A DNA stretch of 64,000 nt, from NCBI GenBank assembly GCA_977030845.1, contig OZ365114.1:16926001-16990000 (forward strand), given 5' to 3'. The notes under the pieces were generated by a model. That model was not told where the DNA came from and did no database searches. It was given only the letters and a program-made list of their open reading frames with translations. Source of the DNA: Fimbriosthenelais zetlandica. Taxonomy: Eukaryota. Numbering within the stretch: the stretch's first letter is position 1; every line of letters begins with the position of its first letter. Both the position numbers and the translations under genes were made by a program. Positions 1 to 55,800 of the stretch are shown here, piece by piece.

Positions 1-235
1 ACAAAATCATCCAATTTCTCAACTAAAGTCATTTCCATCATTTACATTGTAGTCGCAACCCAAACACACGTCCTGAACCAAGAGCAATTTCCTTTCCCCA
101 AATGTACAAATTTCATCATTTTCAGGTTTGTTTCAGATTCTTGCAGATTTTGACAGTTGGGCAGGCCTTGCATACCAAGGAGCTCCTCATATCAGATGTA
201 TTTTAGAAAATGAAAGTCTGATGGCAAAAACCAAC

Positions 236-427
236 CTTGAGGCCCCGCTCGCCTTTTTCTCCAGGTGGCCCCACAGCAGTTTCCCCTTTTCCTCGTACAG
301 AATTGCCTGCCGCTGGGGTTCCAGGTGGCCCGGGGGAACCTGGATCTCCTTGGTCACCTTTTGCCCCAGTGAAACCTAAGCCCATATTACCTTTAGGCCC
401 CGGAGGACCAGCAGGACCTCTTTCTCC
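236..427 (-). CDS. COL4A2: alpha2(IV) 192-nt exon Y (candidate mutually exclusive exon)
   Basis: gcttttag|GGA...AAG|gttggt; encodes [64 protein letters not shown]. Confidence 0.9.
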
Positions 428-3400
428 CTAAAAGCAACAACAACAAAAACAAACAACACGTCAACAACATAAGCAACAACAGGGGTTAGCAACTGCAGCA
501 GCAACAGCAACAACAAAAACAGCAGCAGCGTTCTTGTATGTGTGCAAGGCGGGGTGTTGGTAGTAGCCACGATGTAAAATCTGCTTGGCTATGTATGGAG
601 TTAGACGGATGCGATTCCTACATAGAAGCTTGGCAGACACTGGTATAGAAGGAACCATTTATTATCAAACCAAAAGAAAAGTATTAAGCCTTTGGTAAAT
701 TTTCCCATCCTTGATGAAATGCACAAAGTTTGAGTCATACAAATTGTAGAGCAATTTTTTTTGCTGATAATTTTTGTCACATTTTTCGAAGGCCAATTTG
801 GAAATGTTAATTTTAAAAGTCAATTTGGTCAAATATTAATGTAGGTCAATTTAATCGAAGGTTAATATGCATGCCATATTACTATGGGAGCAGTGGAGCT
901 TCAAAGGGATAGCTCATCAGTAAATCATAAAGGGGTTATTACAACAGACGCATTAGCTTATCTCCCAATGATTAATAATGAATGGTTCCTCATTAGTCAG
1001 CTTATGGTGGTTTTGGTAATTGGGGGTTTCTTTCTTTTTCCCTGGACGGATACAAACCTTCATTCCCTTGTCACCTTTACCTCCAGGTGGACCGACGATG
1101 GTCTCGTTAGGTTTTTTTTGTTCATTAGGATTGCCAGGCGGACCTGGGGGTCCTGGAGGCCCAGGCAGACCTGGTTCACCTGGTGGACCCACTATACCTA
1201 AACCAGGGTTACCACGAGGCCCCTCAGGGCCAGTGGGACCAGGCAGTCCCTATAGGATAGATTGTATGGTAAATGATTCAGAATTTCTTTTTTTAAACTC
1301 ACGAAAGACTTATTCAGAAACTCATACGTTATAGATAGCTTTTCCACAAATAATATTATGTAGCCTGTATAAAAATGAAATTCATCTATCTGAGAAATTC
1401 ATATGACATTTTGTGAGAATACGGATCGTATGTATTTTGAAGGACATAATATTAAAATGTGCGAGTTCATATTGAAAATGAACTTACCTCATCTTAGGCG
1501 TGCATTAAATATAAGTTTTGTTATGAATGATCTCATAATTACATTACTACAAAATTCATTGTATAGATTTCAACAAGTTTATACCACATTATATTATGCT
1601 CGTTCCAAGAGCATTTTAGCTCTCAAGTAAATTATCACTGTTACTTTCGATAGTTTCATTCTATGAGGATTATTTATCATAATATACATGTACATGTAAA
1701 TATTAAATGGTCAGAGTTTGATAATGTACTTACGGGGATACCAGAGCCACCGGGATCGCCTTTCATTCCAAGAGGTCCATCATTTCCAGATGGGCCCTGC
1801 AACGAACAAATTCCCTGATTAGTTAAGTTTTCTAACAACGATCAAACAGTTTTTATCTATAGAGCTTGATTCCCATAAAGTAGGATCATGTAATATTAAA
1901 ATTGATCAAATTTGGAATTGCAAAACTGACAAACTCTTACCGGCAAGCCAGGTGGTCCATCACGTCCTGGTTCTCCCTGAAAAGGACAAAAATGTAAACT
2001 TTAAACAAGTATTTTGACATTTTGTCGAGCACAATAATTATGTTTAAGGAAGATTTGGGGTCAGACTCTATTGATTTTAAATAATATATTGACCTTTCCG
2101 CCCTTAATGCCTTCTCCTCCCGTGGCTGGTTCTCCTTTCTGACCCTTGTATCCCGGCGTTCCTGGTAATCCGGAAGGACCCTCTGGGCCTGATACACCAG
2201 GTGTTCCGGGGCTTCCCTGGCAATGAAGAAGAAAACAAGTTTTAAGCACCAAATACAGAGAAAAGGGGCAAATTAGAGAAAATGTGGGACACAGGATGGA
2301 GGGAGATAGCTGTAGAAAAGGGCGAATTAGTTAGGACTGTGCGAGGTGGATGAGGAGGGTGTGAGATAGAGGAAGGAGGGAGATAGCTGTAGAAAGGGCG
2401 AATCAGAGAGGAGGGTTGGGATAGAGGAGGGAGGGAGATAGCTGTATAGAAAGGTGCGGTGTAACTGGGGGATGTGGGAGAGAGGAGACATGCATGTCTT
2501 AAGGAAACATAGCTGTCATACCTGAGTGCCATTGCAACCATCCAAACCAGGCAAACCTCGGGGTCCTATGGGTCCGGGTAATCCCTAGAAAGTGACAAAA
2601 AGAGAATATGTTAATTACCATCCAGGGATATAACAGTAGACAGGCATACATGTCAGTATATGACAATATAATTATGTAACATTATCAAAAGTACTTGACT
2701 GAAGACTGATGAACATTGACAATTATTGCCAAATTCAAAATCAAATAATTATTGTAAATATACAAAAGAGATGGATACTTACAGGAATGCCGTTGATACC
2801 GGGGAATCCTGGCATTCCCATCTTTCCCTACAAAATGAGTGCATACCAATTAATAATCTATCATTCAAATGTCAGTGGTTGTTTACTGAACTTAGAAGAG
2901 AAAAATAGCTCTCTTACACAAAAGAAGGACTTTTGCCTACGATCTATCTTCTTATGATGTGGCAGAATGACATTTGTCATTAACTCTTCCTTCCATATTA
3001 TTACCAAGCTGGTAGAGAAAGCTATTGAGCCACAATTGATGGGAGTGCCTAGTGTCACATAGAACAACAAGGCCCTGAGAACTGCTCATAGTTGGATGTG
3101 TTTCCTCGTCCATATTTCAGCCTGATTTCAGGCAACAGCTGGCTGAATTCCTCACACACCTTGACATTTTTTACCCCATACCTCGTGTCACCTTCATCTT
3201 CTGAGGGCATAGTTGTGTACTAGATAGACAGGAATCCGTTACAACTACAACCACAGTAGAGACACTCAACTACTACGACTACTACCTGAGCAACTCAGAG
3301 TTGTTCTTCATCATTTTTTTCTTCAACGCAGGCCTGTGTTTGTGGCTTGTACCTACAGATGCTTCTCTCTGGCTTATGAATGAGGGACAACAGATGGGAG

Positions 3401-6400
3401 AGAGGGATGGCAGGAAAAGACCAGCAAAACAGCTTTTTACTTAGAGTACATAGGAAAAAATGTCGCTCTATTTTGACCAGGTGCGAACCAAGTCAGCCTC
3501 TAGATCTGCCTACTCTCACGTAGAGTGGTGTAGGCACAGGAGTCCAGGTGGTGAGAGTGTGTTCCCGCGCCTACTAGAACATATCTAGTAACAAAACCAC
3601 AATTTATTATTGTCAAGGATGGCAAAAAGTGGAGAAAGGGATAAGAAATATCACCAAGGTCTGGCTTGTATTAGGTGTATACTATAAGAAATATAAGAAA
3701 AGTAGAAGAATTAGCTGTCTAACGGCATGGTACAGCCTCAATAGTTGTAGATGAGTCTATACTTCAAATTTACTTTTAAAAATTTAGGGTTGAGGATTTT
3801 AACCCCCTCTTTTAACCTGTAACTCTTTATGATCTTTATGAAGATGTATATCCATCAATCACTCTCTTCTACCCCCAGAGCTCTACCGATCACTTAGATG
3901 CATTTTCCTTCGTATTAATAAGCCGTGTGAACTGCTCCCTTCACCGCGGCAACTTGACATACTTAGAACGTAACATATGGCTCCCCTAGCAGCTCATGTC
4001 AAACCAACGCCATCAATTAGCCCTCCGCCCTCCAGGTGGAGTTGTTGGTGGCGCCCCCTGGGTGAGTAGGAGTGAGGCGCCACCTAGTTCATCGCGCGAG
4101 TTGCTCCCCTGGAGTTTCTGCTTAGAACCATTGCTCTCAGGGGCTCGGCGGGGAGCATTCGCCCCCACCATTCAACACGTTGCCTGACAGGGTTTTTAAA
4201 TGAGGTCAGGGCCCTTATCATTCCCTGGTTTATATCACATCAGATTATTAACTTTTTTCCAGCGTAACAACCAGCAGAAACCTGAGTATTATGGGTATTC
4301 ATTTCCATACGCATGTACTCCTGATGTTGCAATTAGAATGGCAATATAAATAATCTTCTTATTCCTAACAAATTGCCAGATTCCGGTACAAAATTTATTA
4401 TATTTCAGAATGAAGAAAAATGATGACGTGCATTAAATGCAGATAAATCGCTAAACTCGGTTCAGAAATGTAGAGCACTCACTCTGTCTCCCTTGGGTCC
4501 ACGTGGTCCATCAGTACCTCGTTCACCTTTACCTCCTTTTGGTCCTCGTAATCCTTCTGGACCAGGGAAACCTGGGTTACCTTGTTCACCTTCTGGACCG
4601 GTGGGGCCGGGGACACCCTGAAACGACCAAGAAAACAGAGCTAAGTCAGAGAGTCACATACAAGATATTGTATAGGCCAACTATCTGCTAGGCACATAAC
4701 ATAACAGGACCGTCACCATTGATCTGGAAAAGAAATCCTTGTGTAGAACTATGTAAAATTCCTCCTCTGTGACAGCAAACATAAACTGTAACCTGTTTGT
4801 ATAAGTTGTATCAGAAGGTGTAAGTCAGTCATACCTGGTCTTATCTGTAGCATGCTCAGCATGTGTATCTTATGTATATTTTTATTTTCTTTGAGAGTAC
4901 AAAGAAGTCTTGTTCACCTTAGGACTCTCTTGAACCCCCATGAAGCAATCTAGAGCTTCGAAAAAGCAATGCATGTTTTATGCACTTATCATTTCATTTT
5001 ATGGTTATTTTAGTATTAACTCACGAGGTAAATTATGAGAGGCTAAGATTAAAAGGCATAGAAGCAGGGAGCCTGGATAAGGGATCTTGAGGGTTAGTTG
5101 GGCGTCCCTCGTTTGCTATTCTCCTGCTGTCTTTGGCAGCAGGTGCACTGTATGATCTCAACAACACCTTCTATAATTAGAGGACTACTTCCTGGTGAAG
5201 GTATAAACGGGCAGGTTGTGTCTGGTAGATGTGGATAGGTGGTTAACCCATCTTTCTATGTAAAGGGCTCCCAGTTGGTGTTTCAATCAGATACTACATT
5301 CACGGGGAACTTACTACCAGACTGCATAAATGTTGGGACAAGAAAATCCCCGCGTTACTACTGATGTTGACCTTTAAGATTAAAATCTTTGGGCTACACT
5401 ACAGAGTGCCAAATTATATCAACAGTCATAGCCCACATTGAACAGTAACTGTTTTATAATGTAATATTTTTATAAAAGAGAGTTTACCAATTATTCAGCA
5501 TAGGGAACTATGTGCTGCACACACTCTGTCTCTGGATTCTGAAATATTCCTGATGTACTTGGGACAGGGTATAGTGTAAATTGCAGTGGAGTATAGGGAG
5601 TTTATGTTTGTTTTAAGGGGTAAATGGCCTGAAATATATTCCTACTCTTGCAGATAACTGAACGTTTGTAGGTAAAATATACAAACATTCGCCACCAAGA
5701 CATTATCCCCACATTATCTGTTAGATCATTATATAAGAGATAACCTGATGGCTCTAACGTATACACACAGAGACTGGTTGCCCATTCATCATAATCTTAA
5801 GGCACCCAGGGCCACATTTCTCTCATTTCATTTCCTACTTTTCAATGTAAACACTATTGACTCCCCATGTACACCAACTCTCTAGTAACATTTTCCATAG
5901 TGGTTTCCTCTGGGACTTGTAGCCCAAACCAACCTTTGAACAGACAAATCTTGGTCGACGATTTTGGGTGGGAAAAATTCCAACTTGCCCTGTCGATATG
6001 CTCATGGGATTAGTGCATTTATATTGAGGTCCCAAAGGAAATCTTTAATAGGTCTACAAAATTCCCACACGTTTCGGAATGTAAGCTTTCCACATGTTTA
6101 GAACAAACTGAGGCATCTACAGCATCGTTGATACTCTGGTGAAGAACCACATTGCGGGTTAGAGTATAGGGATGGGGTCTGCCACAGTGTTTATCCATTT
6201 CCCATCATCTGATGTGGATTTATTCCCACATAGACACAAGTAGCAATGTGCAAGTTGTTAAGTCACACTGTGGTTAGGCTCTGTTGACGTACATCAGGCA
6301 GACATTTAAGACCATGACATTAAGCCTTTTACTTTTAATATCACCCACACATTTCCAGGTCATATCAATATTGCATCCATTGATATTCAACATAGCCATG

Positions 6401-49800: not shown

Positions 49801-52800
49801 AGTCTTCACATATTTTCAATGTGGAGAAATATATAGCAGCTAACTCCTGCATGGGAGTCAGCTTGGCATCGTAGATCATTGTAGGGATGTCATACAGGTT
49901 GGCCACATGGTTGCTGACCTTCCTTGACCTTGGAACCCTTCCAGCCATATTCCCCACCAGTCTGCACCCCTATAGCTTGGGACCGTTCAACAATGAAAGC
50001 ATTGGAGGGACCGGGTTACGAGAAATTAACACACTACATTTTCTGAATTCTCATGAACCTCCATTATCACATGTCTGGAGCTGTGACTTGTCATGATTCC
50101 CAGACATTATAAAGGAATTGGGATATTAACTAGAAATGTACTGCCCAAATGAGGCTCTGGTGGGCTTTTAGCCATTAATAATGTCCGACCCTCTATAGCC
50201 CTCCAGCCACCCAGTGAAGTACCCTTGGCTAATATTCTGGGCGTGGTCGTGACGTTGGAGGTCAATAGGTAAAGATCCTAGAACTGCTCCAACTGTTCTG
50301 TCGAGTACTCCCATTCACCCTGACTTGTATCGTAAAGTGAGATTAAAATGACAAGGAGGGTGATAATGACTTCGTTAGGAGGCCTGGCAGATCTGTCGTA
50401 AAACCAGACAGAAGCCATCTCTGTTCTGTCAGATAGAGCTCCTCGAGGGGCCTATATTTTCACAGATATTGAGCGAATCTGAATTCAGTGCCAATATATT
50501 AAAGGCCTATAACAGGTTCATCCTTTATGTTTTCCGCATGCTGATTTGACATATATCAGCATATATGGCATTATGATTATAATATCACAATTCGAGTGCC
50601 CTGGTATGTGAAATTAAATTAAATTCTATCAAATCCTTTTAGCAGACGTACCTAGTTGTGTTCATGTATGTCAGGAAGAAGTAGGCCTATATATTTAGAT
50701 ATCTATTTAAGTATGCGAGTCAAATGATTATACAATTAATTTACAAGATTTAAATAGTAACTTACCAGTCAATAGATTTCTTTGATTGCTTCAGACAGTT
50801 AATATACAGTTTGAGGAATGAGTTGGAAGAATCGTTTGGGAAACACGAATCCTGGTAAATGGCAAGTTCTGAAAATATAGAGTAAAAACAAGATTTATTA
50901 TTGTATCGAATCATGAAAGTTCATAGTACTCTGCAGAAACCAGACATTGTTTTTTGTCTGCAGTAAATGTAGAGGCCAGGAGACGGATGTGTGCGAACTG
51001 ATTTCCTTGTATTCTGGAGGTATTTTGATAAAGGTGTAAGCTCGCGGTGAAAATTCTAAGAATCGTGACATGTACTGCAGCTGTATTCCCTAACTGGGTT
51101 CCCTAAACATTCTGAGATAACAGCCATGGATATATACGGTACCTGCTCAGGTAACTTATCCAAGGATCTGTTGAATTCTTCCTATTAAGGTACTATTTTT
51201 AGATAAATTAAACATTCTGAAAGATGCTGCTAGCTGGTAGAAAAAACATTAAAATGAACGTACAAGTTGAAGTAGCAGTTTTTGCAGGGGACGGAGCAAG
51301 ATGAATCGGGAGTAGAGAGGAGGTTTAGAGAAGGAGGAGTAATGTTAGGGACAGATGATGAACACCAGACGTGTCTGAGATTGGATCCATGTCTAAACCC
51401 TAAGTTACATAAGTGGTCACGGTGGCATCTTCTTAGCGCTGCAGGTTCATGCCTTGTTTCTAATGTAAACCAACCTTGTTCCACCTCTCCTTGAGGATGG
51501 GAGAGATAGGCTGCCCTGGAATGTCAGGATCAAAATAGGTCTCAGATAAGTTTATACTTGGGACTGGTACAATTCTCTTGTTTCTTGTAAACCCTTTTTT
51601 CAGCTTCCTTATACTATACATGTACATTTTTAGTTCAATGCCCGTGTAAATTAATGTAACAAATTTCCTTATGGCTTGAACAGACCAGAGCGTTTTTGTG
51701 GTCGCGCTCTTGGCACAGGCGAATTTTTATAACAGACCCACCTTAGTCGAGAGAGTGCACGCCCAAATCAAACCAATGCATAGCCTCTTCGACTGAATTA
51801 GAAAATTATACCAGTGCACTCAATTGCTGGCATTTTTTTCTGAAGTCGGATGACAAGGAAAACGCAACTTCGCAAGCAACCAGAGGCGTTTACAGTTTGT
51901 TCCAGGCATTAAAATATTCTACTTGGACACCTGTTTAGCTATAACATCTGTTCACGGAAAGATTCATAGACCCACAAGGGCAGATAATGTCACATTCAGC
52001 TTCAGTGGATAGCTTGGCATGTCCAGTCTTGACCAGAGGTAAAACATGGTGGGAACTGCTCGTTTCATGAAACATTGAGCATGTTATTACTGGAAAAATG
52101 ACCTCCTCGCCTTGACCCTGCTCAAAGGGTGCTGTGAGAAAGCGCCCGGGGCAGGGGGGCGACAGCACATACCAAAGCCAATATACCACACTGAGCCTAA
52201 TGAAAGGGACACAACCACATGTGGTCACTACAAATATGGGTCAATTCATGGTGTGAACAAGATGAAGAGACAACTTGAAAATGACCTCGCTCTTTGTGCA
52301 GGGTCATTCAAAATATTAAAATATTTTTTTCAGTATAATTGAAACACCACTGGATACGACACTGATATGGTTGCCGGAAGCCTCTTCCTGAAAATTGGTC
52401 ATTTTCTGGTGATAAAATGTATAATTTCACTCGATTTTTGTGATCATGTTAGAATATGTTGGACTAAATGGATTTTCTCATTCTAGGGCCTGTCAGGCGA
52501 GTCTGGGTCTCGTGGTCCCCAAGGATTCCAAGGATGTAACGGAACAAAGGTACACCAAATTACTTTAAGTCGAATTTAGCTCCGTTATTAAATTGCGATA
52601 GTCAATGAAAATATTAAATCAATAAGATTGTGGCAAATACAATTGCCCTTCATATACGAGTGGTTAAAAAAGAAATACCAGACAATGCCATTGCAGTATT
52701 AAGCCCCATTGATGGATAGTGTCCATTGTTTCTTAACATAATCTTAATGGCTATATGATGACAGGTCCTACCCTGTCATCTTCTTTATTCACAACATGTG

Positions 52801-55800
52801 GTGAGGGCCTTTCTTTTATAAAAATTAATAAAGAAAACAATAGGTTGCAATGTATTCCTAACATATCGCTATCCTTTGATCCATCAAAAATTAGAAGATC
52901 CTTAAACCTCTTAAGCTAAAGTTGAAGCATCTTAGCAATGTCTTTCACTTTCATGTGGACGTGACAGTGCCGAATGGATTTAGCTTGACAATAATTTTTG
53001 ATATCCCATTATATGTACTTCTTTTTAAGAGGTCTACCATGAACCATCAGAACTCTCTACCATCACAGAGACAGATATTGTAAAGTCATGAATTTGTTTC
53101 TCTGATTTTCTGCCCCTGTAGGGATTATCTGGACTGCGTGGTTTGCCTGGTTTACCAGGTCATCGTGGACGTGATGGAGGACTCGGTTATAATGGCGTTA
53201 AGGTCGGTCTCGAATTATTTTATTTTTCAGTTGATATTTAATGTACCATTTGTAAACACCTATTATTTATTCCCTGAGTAATACATTACTGGCCTCAGTA
53301 GTTATACATCACTGGCATTATCTAAACTTTTCTAACCTTCCAACAGGGAGAACCAGGAGATTATGGTTCCACTACTGTTGGCCTCAGAGGAGAATCTGGA
53401 GACTATGGCCAAGCAGGAAACCCGGTAAGATATGAACTAACTTTACCATTTTGTACAATATTACCAGGTACTAAATTTGTCGTACTATCATTGTCTGTTC
53501 GAGCATATAGCAGTAATGCATAGTATCCCTCCTATTGTTGATAATATATCGTTTATATAAAATTATCTTTATGTTTAGGGAGCTGCTGGATACCCAGGAT
53601 TTTCTGGGGAGAAGGGCCCCCAGGGAGAACCGGGACCACAAGGGTGGTTTGGAACACGAGGTCCTCAGGGACCTAAAGGCGCCATGGGCCCTGATGCTTA
53701 TGGTCCAAAGGGCAGGAAGGTGAGTAGATTTCTTTTAAAGTATATATCACTTCACGAAGGATAGATTTTGTGTATTCAGATTAAGTTCATAGAAATGAAT
53801 ATAAATGGGTGAATATAATACAAGTCACCCAGCATATTATATTGCGGAAAGTTTATATAATGTTAAGCCTAATGAATGTAGTGAATAATTTCTTTTTTAT
53901 ACATTAGAGCTGTTCTTTTCTAATGGTAGTTCCAAGCAATAACCATGATTTTCTTTCAGAAAGATACTCTGTGATTATAATTTGGCTTGCTTCTAACTTT
54001 CTAGCAATTTTTAAATTGCTTCGAAGATCATTTGTCTGTTAAAATCCATGCAGCTTATACAACTTAATAGCCTAATGCCTTACACCATAAATCCCCATTG
54101 ATATTACATTACCAAAGGCATGGATGGGGAGAAGTAGAAGTATTTGTAAGGGGATATTGAATAATTCTTAGGTTCATGTTACTTTGGTAGCCCCGTCTTC
54201 TATCTGCCTGCAGCAGATCAAAAGATATAAATTTTATTTTACTTGAATCAAGCGATAAGTAGAATTGCTCATGCTTTCTTGCATGCTTTACCAAAGGCAT
54301 ATATATCGTTTTTCCACATGGTAATAGTGGATACGAGTAGGCAAAATAGGCAAGCCTACTTAACTATATTTTTCGCTTTTCTTTAACCCACAAATTGAAA
54401 TCATTATTGACCATTTTGTCAATTAGGCCTAATGATGGAGACCTTTCTCTCAGACCAACCAAAAAGTTCAGATAAGGGCATACCGTGTGAACATTTTCGT
54501 ACAATAATATTATACCTCATTTTTAAATACTACTTTGTATACCAGGTACCTTGTAAATAAGATGATGACGACACAGTATGGCCCTTTTGTTGTAATTGAT
54601 TAAAATTTTAACTGGTGGACAAATGTACTGGTAAAAGCTACCACCAAGAATCAAATGATTGATGAAAGCACTCTGTTTATACTAGGGTGAGACAGGTTTA
54701 CCAGGATCTCCTGGTCTGCCTGGGTCTTCGGAAGTGACCACCCTCCCAACCCAGGAGATCAAGGAGGGCAGGAAGGGCATGGGTGGCGGCAAGGGTATTC
54801 CTGGCGACCCTGGAAGAATGGGACTACATGGATACGACGGTGAAGACGTAAGTCAGTTGTTAATATACTGTTAGTGATTAATTGAAAAGTAAAGTCAATT
54901 TTAATCGTGGTCAATTGTTTGAGAGACTAAGTCAAGATTTCAATTGTTTTACAGGGACCAACAGGCCCAAAGGGTCCAAATGGCATGCCCGGTCAGCAAG
55001 GTCCGGAGGGACGGAGGGTGAGTCATTCCTATATCATAGTGATTACCTTATAGTAAAAATTCTAGTATATTCACTAAACTCTGGAACCAAATTTTAAACG
55101 ACATATTATAATTTTACACACAGGGTAAACGTGGTAAGGATGGTCCTCCGGGCCCCTACGGACCTAAGGGCATACGTGGTGACGATGGGAGTGATGGACT
55201 GCCAGGGTTGAACGGACTGCATGGCCAAAAGGGAGAGGGCGGATATGACGGCGCCCGTGGCCCACCAGGACCGCCCGGACCCGGCAGCCCTGTGCAACCC
55301 CCACGGTTTGGACCCAAGGGTGATAAAGGAGAACCAGGAGATTCTGGAGGAATTGGTGAGAATTTTAGGCATTATCAAAGGTTATATTTGCGGGGAGTGA
55401 ATAGGTCATCTAAAAGAACTATGTTCTTTAGAACTTTCAATTAATTTCATTTCTGTTGTTTGCAGGTCGTGACGGAGATCCTGGTGTAGATGGTTACCCC
55501 GGAGGGCCTGGAGTGCCTGGCCCAGATGGGCCTCCAGGTCAGCCTGGACCGTGGGGCATGTCATTTAAGGGAGATCCAGGAGAGAACGGTAAGCATGAAT
55601 AACCGGGCATGACTAGCACTCAAAGTAGACGTGCACGCCATATTTTAAACTCTATACTGTGGGTCTTGCATTTTGCTTTATTCAAAAATAACCTTAAGGT
55701 TATTTGGACTATACATTTGCAAGTATTTTTACGCATGAAATTTAGTCTGAATAGTGCTTTTGATGGCTGTTTCTCTGATCTTCTCTCTCTTCTCTGAGCT

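What the first reader, a model, noticed from the sequence alone, without database searches (positions are those of the whole stretch)
236..1249. Tandem 192-nt paralogous exons: candidate mutually exclusive splicing of alpha2(IV), at the position of nematode let-2 exons 9/10
Seen in sequence: exons X (1058-1249) and Y (236-427) are both 192 nt and phase 0-0, and they align without gaps. Both have five triplets plus GLG followed by a 2-residue interruption (IV vs FT), a second interruption ending ETIV vs ETAV, and a GPPGxKGxxGxK end. Both have the unusual donor AAG|GTT(T/G)GT, and X has a poor pyrimidine tract. Established: C. elegans let-2 alpha2(IV) uses mutually exclusive, developmentally switched exons 9/10, and from memory they cover the homologous GPPGPPG-interruption-IVGP..GEKGDK segment; vertebrate COL4A2 has one such unit. 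Inference: this animal has a basement-membrane isoform switch at the same site, either ancestral or convergent. The exons here are longer and the intervening intron is 630 nt, so exclusion cannot be steric. I cannot confirm whether this has been reported outside nematodes.
Basis: partly seen in the sequence, partly recalled or inferred. Interest (0 to 1): 0.85.

Follow-up and report, generated by a model that had tools for sequence, protein, structure and literature searches.

The report
Twin alternative exons in collagen IV
A basement-membrane collagen IV gene of a marine invertebrate (probably an annelid) carries two side-by-side versions of one 64-residue exon, both kept by selection in many related species; it very probably uses one per mRNA, a switch so far described only in nematodes, but no RNA data could be found to prove it.

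Summary
Minus-strand exons X (1058-1249) and Y (236-427) are both 192 nt and phase 0-0 with AG/GT borders. They are 55% identical without gaps, and their triple-helix breaks fall at matching places.

The gene is one of a head-to-head collagen IV pair. Twenty other contigs hold the same exon in tandem, as pairs or, once, as three copies. Both copies are under purifying selection: dN/dS is 0.13 (X) and 0.22 (Y) against the closest relative.

The intron flanks of Y are as conserved as the exons, while the middle of the intron is not alignable.

The strongest argument for one-at-a-time use is register. Counted from the 7S GCNGT site, a chain with X alone or Y alone has breaks at +92 and +112/115. 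The partner gene in this window and three environmental collagen IV cDNAs have the same map. X+Y together would add breaks at +156 and +176 and shift everything after them by 64 residues.

No RNA run was listed, so splicing is inferred, not shown. The alpha2 label and the equivalence with let-2 exons 9/10 remain unverified. Exclusion here cannot be steric, unlike let-2, whose intervening intron is 30 nt.

I found no report outside nematodes. The scan had noted this same stretch once before (s1-188516).

The parts
1058..1249 (-). Exon X: 192 nt, phase 0-0, 64 residues. It has a 2-residue break (IV) and an 11-residue break carrying an N-E-T glycosylation sequon. Donor AAG|GTTTGT.
   Evidence: Ortholog in L001:1508-1699 with dN/dS 0.13. 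The donor GTTTGT is conserved in most related loci.
236..427 (-). Exon Y: 192 nt, phase 0-0, 64 residues. It has a 2-residue break (FT) and a 14-residue break without a sequon (G-E-T). Donor AAG|GTTGGT.
   Evidence: Ortholog in L001:2242-2433 with dN/dS 0.22. The donor GTTGGT is conserved.
428..1057 (-). Intervening intron of 630 nt, long enough to be spliced. Its middle part (660-997) is not alignable with the relative (49% identity).
545..642 (-). Conserved intronic core upstream of Y. It is 84% identical overall to L001, and its central part is nearly invariant in the alignment. It contains UCUAAC (604-600) in the loop of a candidate hairpin (584-630). It is not repeated elsewhere in the window and has no Rfam match.
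   Evidence: (hairpin z = -1.97, 9 of 200 shuffles as good)
428..493 (-). U/G-rich tract leading into the Y acceptor, with a second conserved CUAAC (489-485, 62 nt upstream of the AG) as a candidate distal branch point. The last 42 nt are 95% identical to L001.
206..235 (-). First 30 nt of the intron downstream of Y, 90% identical to L001. The next exon lies beyond the window's edge.
870..874 (-). Single GCAUG (Rbfox-type core) 184 nt downstream of X. It is not conserved in L001, but two UGCAUG/GCAUG elements at comparable places are near-invariant in the 12-contig worm group.
1734..1796 (-). Upstream exon (21 residues) that must splice to X or to Y.
   Evidence: Homologs in L001, L003 and L043.
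1941..2216 (-). Two upstream exons (1941-1976, 12 residues; 2094-2216, 41 residues with the 2-residue break AT).
2522..2584 (-). 7S-domain exon ending GCNGTQ. This is the anchor used for the interruption map.
53579..54847 (+). The single homologous unit of the head-to-head partner collagen IV gene. It is split over two exons (53579-53719 and 54686-54847), with breaks at +92 (AY) and +115 (12 residues) from its GCNGTK.

Best explanation
X and Y are a tandem-duplicated pair of alternative exons of a type IV collagen gene. Each mature mRNA most likely carries exactly one of them.

The two protein forms have the same length. They differ in the first long break of the triple helix after the 7S domain, about 112-126 residues after the GCNGT site. 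The X form has an 11-residue break with an N-E-T glycosylation sequon. The Y form has a 14-residue break without one.

Shown:
- The exon pair and its homology.
- Its conservation under purifying selection.
- The conserved intron flanks of Y.
- The fit of a single unit to the break map of the partner chain.

Inferred:
- The choice is made by regulated splicing, acting through the conserved elements around Y: a core with UCUAAC, a U/G-rich tract with a distal CUAAC, and the first 30 nt downstream. It is not made by a steric block or by frame-dependent decay.
- The choice changes glycosylation and flexibility of that break in basement-membrane collagen.

Which factor acts, and when or where each form is used, is unknown.
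For: 1. Homology is well above collagen background.

2. Both exons are intact with AG/GT borders in the closest relative. There dN/dS is 0.13 (X) and 0.22 (Y), at dS 0.67 and 0.44.

3. Tandem copies of this exon occur in 20 further distinct contigs in six further groups: L001; 12 contigs of one group; L016; L017/L032/L042; L019; L038; and L043 with three copies. All are open and all lengths are multiples of 3. Within the 12-contig group the median dN/dS is 0.375 for both copies. An extra third copy in L034 has decayed.

4. Interruption map from GCNGT:
   - X-only: 30/92/115
   - Y-only: 30/92/112
   - Partner gene in this window: 36/92/115/229
   - cDNA L015: 33/92/115/227
   - cDNA L039: 36/92/115/228 (plus a 3-residue break at +6)
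   - cDNA L035: 30/90/113/228
   - X+Y would add breaks at 156 and 176 and displace the next break by 64 residues.

5. All four spliced environmental collagen IV cDNAs hold one unit and never two.

6. L043 has the same upstream architecture (CNGTQ exon, then 53 + 21 residues) and then three units. Copy number therefore varies while the map is fixed.

7. Identity to L001 is 84% in the core upstream of Y, 95% in the acceptor tract and 90% in the first 30 nt downstream. It is 49% in the middle of the intron and 82-84% in the exons. This is the usual signature of a regulated alternative exon. The same kind of conserved intronic elements in let-2 was shown to matter (PMC1500816).

8. The first copy carries an N-x-S/T sequon in 17 of 19 loci. 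The second copy carries one in 1 of 20, and at a different place.
Against: - There is no transcript evidence for this species or for any species shown to have the pair. No RNA run was listed, and the only holders were plankton metagenome runs with genomic pieces.
- Both exons are 3n and the intron is spliceable. Double inclusion or double skipping would stay in frame, and nothing found here forbids them.
- The register argument assumes that the partner gene's chain pairs with this one and that breaks must coincide. Its downstream half rests on cDNAs of other, unidentified organisms, because the window ends 235 nt after Y.
- The cDNA contigs cannot be tied to a genome with a pair (no nucleotide match).
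- No RNA structure with covariation support was found.
- Donor weakness is not specific to the duplicated state.
Confidence: 0.72

Rival explanations
1. Constitutive tandem duplication: both exons are always included, so this chain is simply 64 residues longer, with two extra breaks.
For: Both exons are in frame (3n, phase 0-0) and have usable splice sites. The 630-nt intron can be removed. No frame or decay penalty exists. Selection on both copies is equally expected under this reading.
Against: The extra breaks at +156 and +176 would face about 100 uninterrupted residues in the partner chain, and all later breaks would be shifted by 64 residues. Copy number is 1, 2 or 3 in genes with otherwise identical upstream spacing. 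All four spliced cDNAs have one unit. The conserved intron flanks of Y are not expected for a constitutive exon.
Confidence: 0.1
2. Non-exclusive alternative use: one exon (probably X) is the standard one, and the other is a cassette exon added or swapped in only rarely or in special tissues. Some double-inclusion or double-skip products would then occur.
For: Only Y has strongly conserved intron flanks; X's flanks are 65-71% identical. Nothing enforces exclusivity: the intron is 630 nt and both exons are 3n.
Against: Both copies show similar constraint in two independent comparisons. A form with neither or both units breaks the conserved break map.
Confidence: 0.13
3. One of the two copies is an unused relic of a duplication.
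For: Decay of an extra copy does happen. L034 carries a third, broken copy between its X-type and Y-type exons.
Against: X and Y are open, keep their splice sites and have dN/dS well under 1 in the closest relative. The same holds for their counterparts in 12 contigs of another group.
Confidence: 0.03

Closest known systems
C. elegans let-2 (alpha2 type IV collagen) exons 9/10, also present in Ascaris suum
   Same: Both are tandem homologous exons of a type IV collagen gene. In both, the exons are 3n and about 55-57% identical in protein (let-2 56.8%; here 55%). In both, the products have the same or nearly the same length and differ mainly in a roughly 10-residue break of the Gly-X-Y repeat (abstract of PMC2119826; PMC2136211; PMC4165533 Table 1). 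The published exon-9 peptide REFTGSGSIVGPR has the same form as the end of the long break here (...ETIV|GPP, ...ETAV|GPP). Conserved intronic elements are present in both (PMC1500816).
   Different: let-2 exons are 108 and 111 nt, separated by a 30-nt intron that is never excised (steric exclusion; PMC4165533). Here the exons are 192 nt and the intron is 630 nt. let-2 regulation acts through the intron downstream of the second exon (ASD-2; PMC4165533). Here the conserved elements lie mostly upstream of the second exon. Nematode collagen IV genes are unlinked (PMC2136211), whereas here the two genes are head to head. Positional identity and common origin are not established.
Regulated mutually exclusive pairs with long intervening introns (C. 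elegans egl-15 5B/5A and unc-32 7a/7b; RBFOX, SUP-12 and CELF/UNC-75 acting on flanking or intervening introns)
   Same: Exclusivity would have to come from regulators bound to conserved intronic elements. The 12-contig group has near-invariant UGCAUG/GCAUG elements about 80-140 nt downstream of the first exon in most contigs. The window has a U/G-rich tract upstream of Y.
   Different: No factor binding has been tested. The GCAUG in the window is not conserved in the closest relative. As summarised in PMC4165533, exclusivity in those worm genes also relies on very short introns or on NMD in many cases, and neither applies here.
Competing-RNA-structure clusters (Dscam exon 6 type docking/selector pairing; from my own knowledge)
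   Same: Both are tandem arrays of 2-3 homologous alternative exons with conserved intronic sequence next to a variant exon.
   Different: No supported long-range pairing was found. The conserved block folds no better than shuffles (z = +1.48), and the alignment folds have no covariation support.

Membership tests
Cluster of homologous mutually exclusive exons (tandem exon duplication type) | Neighbouring exons of one gene, on the same strand, with no other exon between them | tested here: met
   no other Gly-X-Y frame lies between 427 and 1058.
Cluster of homologous mutually exclusive exons (tandem exon duplication type) | Same or nearly the same length, and the same phase at both ends | tested here: met
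   192 and 192 nt, phase 0-0. In relatives the lengths are 177-198 nt and always 3n.
Cluster of homologous mutually exclusive exons (tandem exon duplication type) | Sequence homology between the copies beyond the background of the protein | tested here: met
   55% gapless identity with breaks at matching places. The 99.9th percentile of collagen IV windows is 34-39%.
Cluster of homologous mutually exclusive exons (tandem exon duplication type) | All copies maintained by selection with intact splice sites in other species | tested here: met
   dN/dS 0.13 and 0.22 against L001. Median 0.375 for both copies in 12 contigs. AG/GT borders are kept.
Cluster of homologous mutually exclusive exons (tandem exon duplication type) | Transcripts contain exactly one copy | not testable with these tools
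   No RNA run was listed, and the metagenome runs gave only genomic pieces. Indirect support comes from the break map and the single-unit cDNAs.
Cluster of homologous mutually exclusive exons (tandem exon duplication type) | A mechanism that prevents double inclusion (short intron, frame shift plus NMD, incompatible splice sites, or competing RNA structure) | tested here: inconclusive
   A short intron is not met (630 nt). NMD is not met (both exons 3n). All introns are GT-AG. RNA pairing has no covariation support. Only regulator-based exclusion remains, and it is untested.
let-2-type exon 9/10 switch of nematode alpha2(IV) collagen | The gene is the alpha2-like chain | tested here: inconclusive
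   The NC1 domain is outside the window. The NC1 of the architecturally closest cDNA, L015, scores 372 bits against mammalian alpha2 and 355 against alpha1, but 337 against fly alpha1 and 244 against Viking. L039 behaves likewise.
let-2-type exon 9/10 switch of nematode alpha2(IV) collagen | The alternative exons cover the same break of the triple helix | tested here: inconclusive
   The exon-9 peptide from PMC2136211 aligns best to residues 44-55 of the unit, the end of the long break, but a 13-mer is not discriminating. The LET-2 sequence could not be obtained.
let-2-type exon 9/10 switch of nematode alpha2(IV) collagen | Intervening intron too short to be excised (30 nt) | tested here: not met
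   630 nt here, and 118-1038 nt in related loci. The let-2 value is from PMC4165533.
let-2-type exon 9/10 switch of nematode alpha2(IV) collagen | Developmental switch driven by an element in the intron downstream of the second exon | not testable with these tools
   Only 235 nt downstream of Y are in the window. The first 30 nt are conserved, and there is no CUAAC there. No expression data are available.
Type IV collagen gene | 7S-domain GCNGT motif, Gly-X-Y repeats with breaks, and a head-to-head partner gene | tested here: met
   GCNGTQ at 2522-2584 (-) and GCNGTK at 52487-52549 (+). The genes are on opposite strands. The head-to-head arrangement is typical of COL4 pairs (PMC12141075).
Type IV collagen gene | C-terminal NC1 domain | not tested
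   It lies outside the window for the minus-strand gene.

The most novel reading that the evidence does not exclude
The exon cluster seen here and the nematode let-2 exon 9/10 pair descend from one ancient duplication. On this reading, a switch between two versions of the first long triple-helix break of collagen IV (one N-glycosylated, one not) is an old protostome feature of basement membranes that has been overlooked outside nematodes. It would since have expanded to three copies in some lineages and shrunk to 108/111-nt exons with a 30-nt intron in nematodes.
Probability: 0.25. Interest if true: 0.75.

Novelty: new member of a known kind. Interest (0 to 1): 0.6.

Why it matters
Collagen IV is the scaffold of all basement membranes. 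The only documented case of an animal switching between two versions of a chain by exon choice is the embryo-to-adult switch of let-2 in nematodes, and its purpose is still unknown.

Finding the same kind of exon cluster in a second, distant group of animals suggests that tuning this particular break of the helix is functionally important. The cluster here is conserved over many species, varies between two and three copies, and shows a consistent difference in a glycosylation sequon.

It also offers a test of whether the switch is ancient or arose repeatedly. And it gives a case in which exclusivity cannot be explained by a short intron or by mRNA decay.

Tried and rejected
- **RNA evidence.** The look-up of sequencing runs with kind rna listed nothing. 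Kind any listed two plankton metagenome runs. Laying them gave two identical genomic pieces (1987-2174 and 1078-1228) plus noise on the CAA/CAG-like tract at about 488-529.
- **Short-protein search with X.** It found nothing because of the length filter.
- **Search with the unit region of cDNA L015.** It was swamped by collagen VII.
- **Search with the NC1 of L015.** It returned only 20 proteins with poor gene models, none usable for the unit.
- **Tree of 56 units (64 columns).** It is unresolved. AU tests reject neither lineage-specific duplications nor a shared origin (p 0.27-0.37).
- **tblastn/blastn of the cDNAs against the genomic loci.** Only repetitive collagen matches appeared, and no nucleotide-level match, so no cDNA can be tied to a genome with a pair.
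- **RNA structure.** The 223-nt conserved region folds no better than shuffles (z = +1.48). A local hairpin at 584-630 is marginal (z = -1.97) and invariant, so it cannot show covariation. The 10-sequence alignment fold has a positive covariation term. A GC-rich pairing I suspected between the two ends of the intron in the worm group is not kept across sequences, on inspection.
- **Rfam.** No match.
- **Weak donors as a mark of the duplicated state.** I dropped this idea: single-copy genes have GTCGGT, GTACGT, GTATGT or GTCAGT at the same exon.
- **Full text of Sibley et al. 1993 and Ohno et al. 2008.** Neither could be read.
Full report
**What is there**

On the minus strand the window holds the 5' part of a type IV collagen gene. 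All of its exons are phase 0:
- 4483-4617
- 2783-2827
- 2522-2584, which ends GCNGTQ, the 7S-domain motif
- 2094-2216
- 1941-1976
- 1734-1796
- X, 1058-1249
- Y, 236-427

The next exon lies beyond the window's edge. A second collagen IV gene runs on the plus strand from 47359, with GCNGTK at 52487-52549. The two genes are therefore head to head, as COL4 pairs usually are (PMC12141075).

X and Y are each 192 nt with AG/GT borders and no stops. They translate to 64 residues that align without gaps at 55% identity. Both have a 2-residue break after six triplets. Both have a long break (11 residues in X, 14 in Y) ending ETIV or ETAV before GPPG. This similarity is well above collagen background: the 99.9th percentile of gapless 64-residue windows in two full-length collagen IV chains is 34-39%.

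**Relatives**

An exhaustive profile search returned many short ORFs that are this same exon read through into its introns. They show the same borders...Q|G at the start and K|V at the end. The exon is thus a conserved module of collagen IV genes.

The closest X-like and Y-like ORFs lie on one Logan contig, L001 (X at 1508-1699, Y at 2242-2433), so the pair exists in a related species. There dN/dS is 0.13 for X and 0.22 for Y, at dS 0.67 and 0.44, and both keep their splice sites.

A scan of metagenome contigs and further look-ups gave more tandem arrangements:
- Twelve distinct contigs of one related group (first copy 177-183 nt, second copy 192 nt).
- L016, L017/L032/L042, L019 and L038.
- L043, which has three copies (5094-5288, 5567-5755, 5959-6150). 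These follow a CNGTQ exon, a 53-residue exon and a 21-residue exon, the same spacing as in the window.

Within the 12-contig group both copies have a median dN/dS of 0.375 and no stops. An extra third copy in L034 is broken. Other contigs, some from the same samples, carry a collagen IV gene with a single unit (L033, L036).

The organisms are not named by the tools. Earlier notes of this scan call the window's genome probably annelid, which I did not test. The head-to-head gene pair and the long introns argue against a nematode like C. elegans, whose two genes are unlinked (PMC2136211).

**One unit or two per chain?**

No RNA run was listed, so this is inferred. The most telling test is the map of triple-helix breaks counted from the residue after GCNGTx:

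| Chain | Breaks at |
|---|---|
| Window gene, X alone | +30, +92, +115 |
| Window gene, Y alone | +30, +92, +112 |
| Partner gene in the same window | +36, +92, +115, +229 |
| cDNA L015 | +33, +92, +115, +227 |
| cDNA L039 | +6, +36, +92, +115, +228 |
| cDNA L035 | +30, +90, +113, +228 |

The three cDNAs are spliced collagen IV cDNAs from environmental transcript assemblies. Every reference chain therefore has about 100 uninterrupted residues after the long break. A chain with X and Y together would place two more breaks there (+156, +176) and push all later breaks 64 residues out of step.

A fourth cDNA (L040) also has one unit, and none has two. The copy number of 1, 2 or 3 behind an identical upstream spacing points the same way. 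The copies are alternatives, not additions.

There are limits to this argument:
- The part of the map after the unit comes from the partner gene and from other organisms.
- None of the cDNAs could be tied to a genome that has the pair.
- Both exons are 3n, so double inclusion or double skipping would stay in frame.

**Signs of regulation**

Against L001, identity by region is as follows:

| Region | Identity |
|---|---|
| Exons X and Y | 82-84% |
| Middle of the X-Y intron | 49% (unalignable) |
| Core at 545-642 | 84% (central part nearly invariant) |
| Last 42 nt before Y | 95% |
| First 30 nt after Y | 90% |
| Flanks of X | 65-71% |

The core holds UCUAAC (604-600) in the loop of a marginal hairpin. 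A second conserved CUAAC lies at 489-485, 62 nt from the acceptor, behind a U/G-rich tract. This agrees with the earlier first-stage note on this intron (s1-188516).

In the 12-contig group the intron has four conserved blocks. They include two near-invariant GCAUG/UGCAUG elements, about 80-140 nt downstream of the first exon in most contigs. The single GCAUG in the window is not conserved in L001.

I found no RNA pairing with covariation support and no Rfam family. The donors GTTTGT (X type) and GTTGGT (Y type) are conserved across groups. They are only moderately weak, and single-copy genes have similar donors, so they prove nothing.

Exclusion cannot be steric (630 nt) and cannot rest on decay of frame-shifted products. 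If the exons are exclusive, regulators or the order of intron removal must do the work. This step is inferred.

**What differs between the forms**

The first copy carries an N-x-S/T sequon inside the long break in 17 of 19 loci. The second copy carries one in 1 of 20, at another place. Many of these loci belong to one group, so they are not independent. The pattern still holds in five groups, but not in L038 or L043, where the order differs. In the window X has N-E-T and Y has G-E-T. A plausible consequence is a glycosylated versus an unglycosylated, slightly longer break. This is inference.

**Comparison with let-2**

The literature gives the following for let-2:
- Exons 9 and 10 are 108 and 111 nt, 56.8% identical in protein.
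- They are separated by a 30-nt intron that is never excised.
- ASD-2 acts on the downstream intron (PMC4165533).
- The products differ mainly in a 9-10-residue break (abstract of PMC2119826).
- The switch is conserved in Ascaris (PMC1500816, PMC2136211).
- An exon-9 peptide is REFTGSGSIVGPR (PMC2136211).

That peptide aligns best to the end of the long break of the unit. This is compatible with the same position but proves nothing. I could not obtain the LET-2 sequence.

The alpha2 label is likewise open. The tree of 56 units is unresolved, and AU tests reject neither shared nor separate origins.

**Novelty**

Five full-text searches found mutually exclusive collagen IV exons only in nematode papers. 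A 2025 survey of COL4 genes across animals does not mention alternative splicing.

**Verdict**

This is a real, selectively maintained tandem exon cluster in a collagen IV gene, and very probably a mutually exclusive pair (0.72). It is a new member of a kind known from nematodes, with a different and still unknown way of enforcing the choice.

Noticed in passing
L043:5094-6150 (same contig as L044; ENA ERZ25069853 ctg29841l): There are three tandem copies of the unit (195, 189 and 192 nt) behind the same upstream exon spacing as in the window. The copy without a glycosylation sequon comes first here, not last.
   Followed up: partly
L034:1197-1385: A third, decayed copy of the unit lies between the intact first and second copies. 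It has lost a Gly position and carries a roughly 20-residue non-collagen insert.
   Followed up: partly
window 650-668 and 972-990: A 19-nt inverted repeat (89% complementary) lies inside the X-Y intron and would loop out 303 nt. By eye, the corresponding L001 arms keep a shorter GGACC/GGUCC pairing. It was not tested further.
   Followed up: no
window 470-545: The imperfect (GTT/GCT)n tract upstream of Y, read as CAA/CAG on the + strand, attracts hundreds of unrelated metagenome contigs. Its sequence is not conserved in L001 (51% identity), although a tract of this kind is present there too.
   Followed up: partly
window 4618-47358: About 43 kb separate the first collagenous exons of the two head-to-head collagen IV genes. 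The signal-peptide exons and the presumed shared promoter must lie in this stretch, but I did not look for them.
   Followed up: no
window 53579-54847 (+): In the partner gene the homologous unit is split by a 966-nt intron right after the 2-residue break (…[11 protein letters not shown] | GETG…). The exon structure of this module therefore differs between the two paralogous genes.
   Followed up: partly
L015:71-5563 and L039:174-5471: These are two complete collagen IV cDNAs (1831- and 1766-residue open frames) from JGI environmental assemblies. L015 has GLNGT instead of GCNGT at the 7S site.
   Followed up: partly
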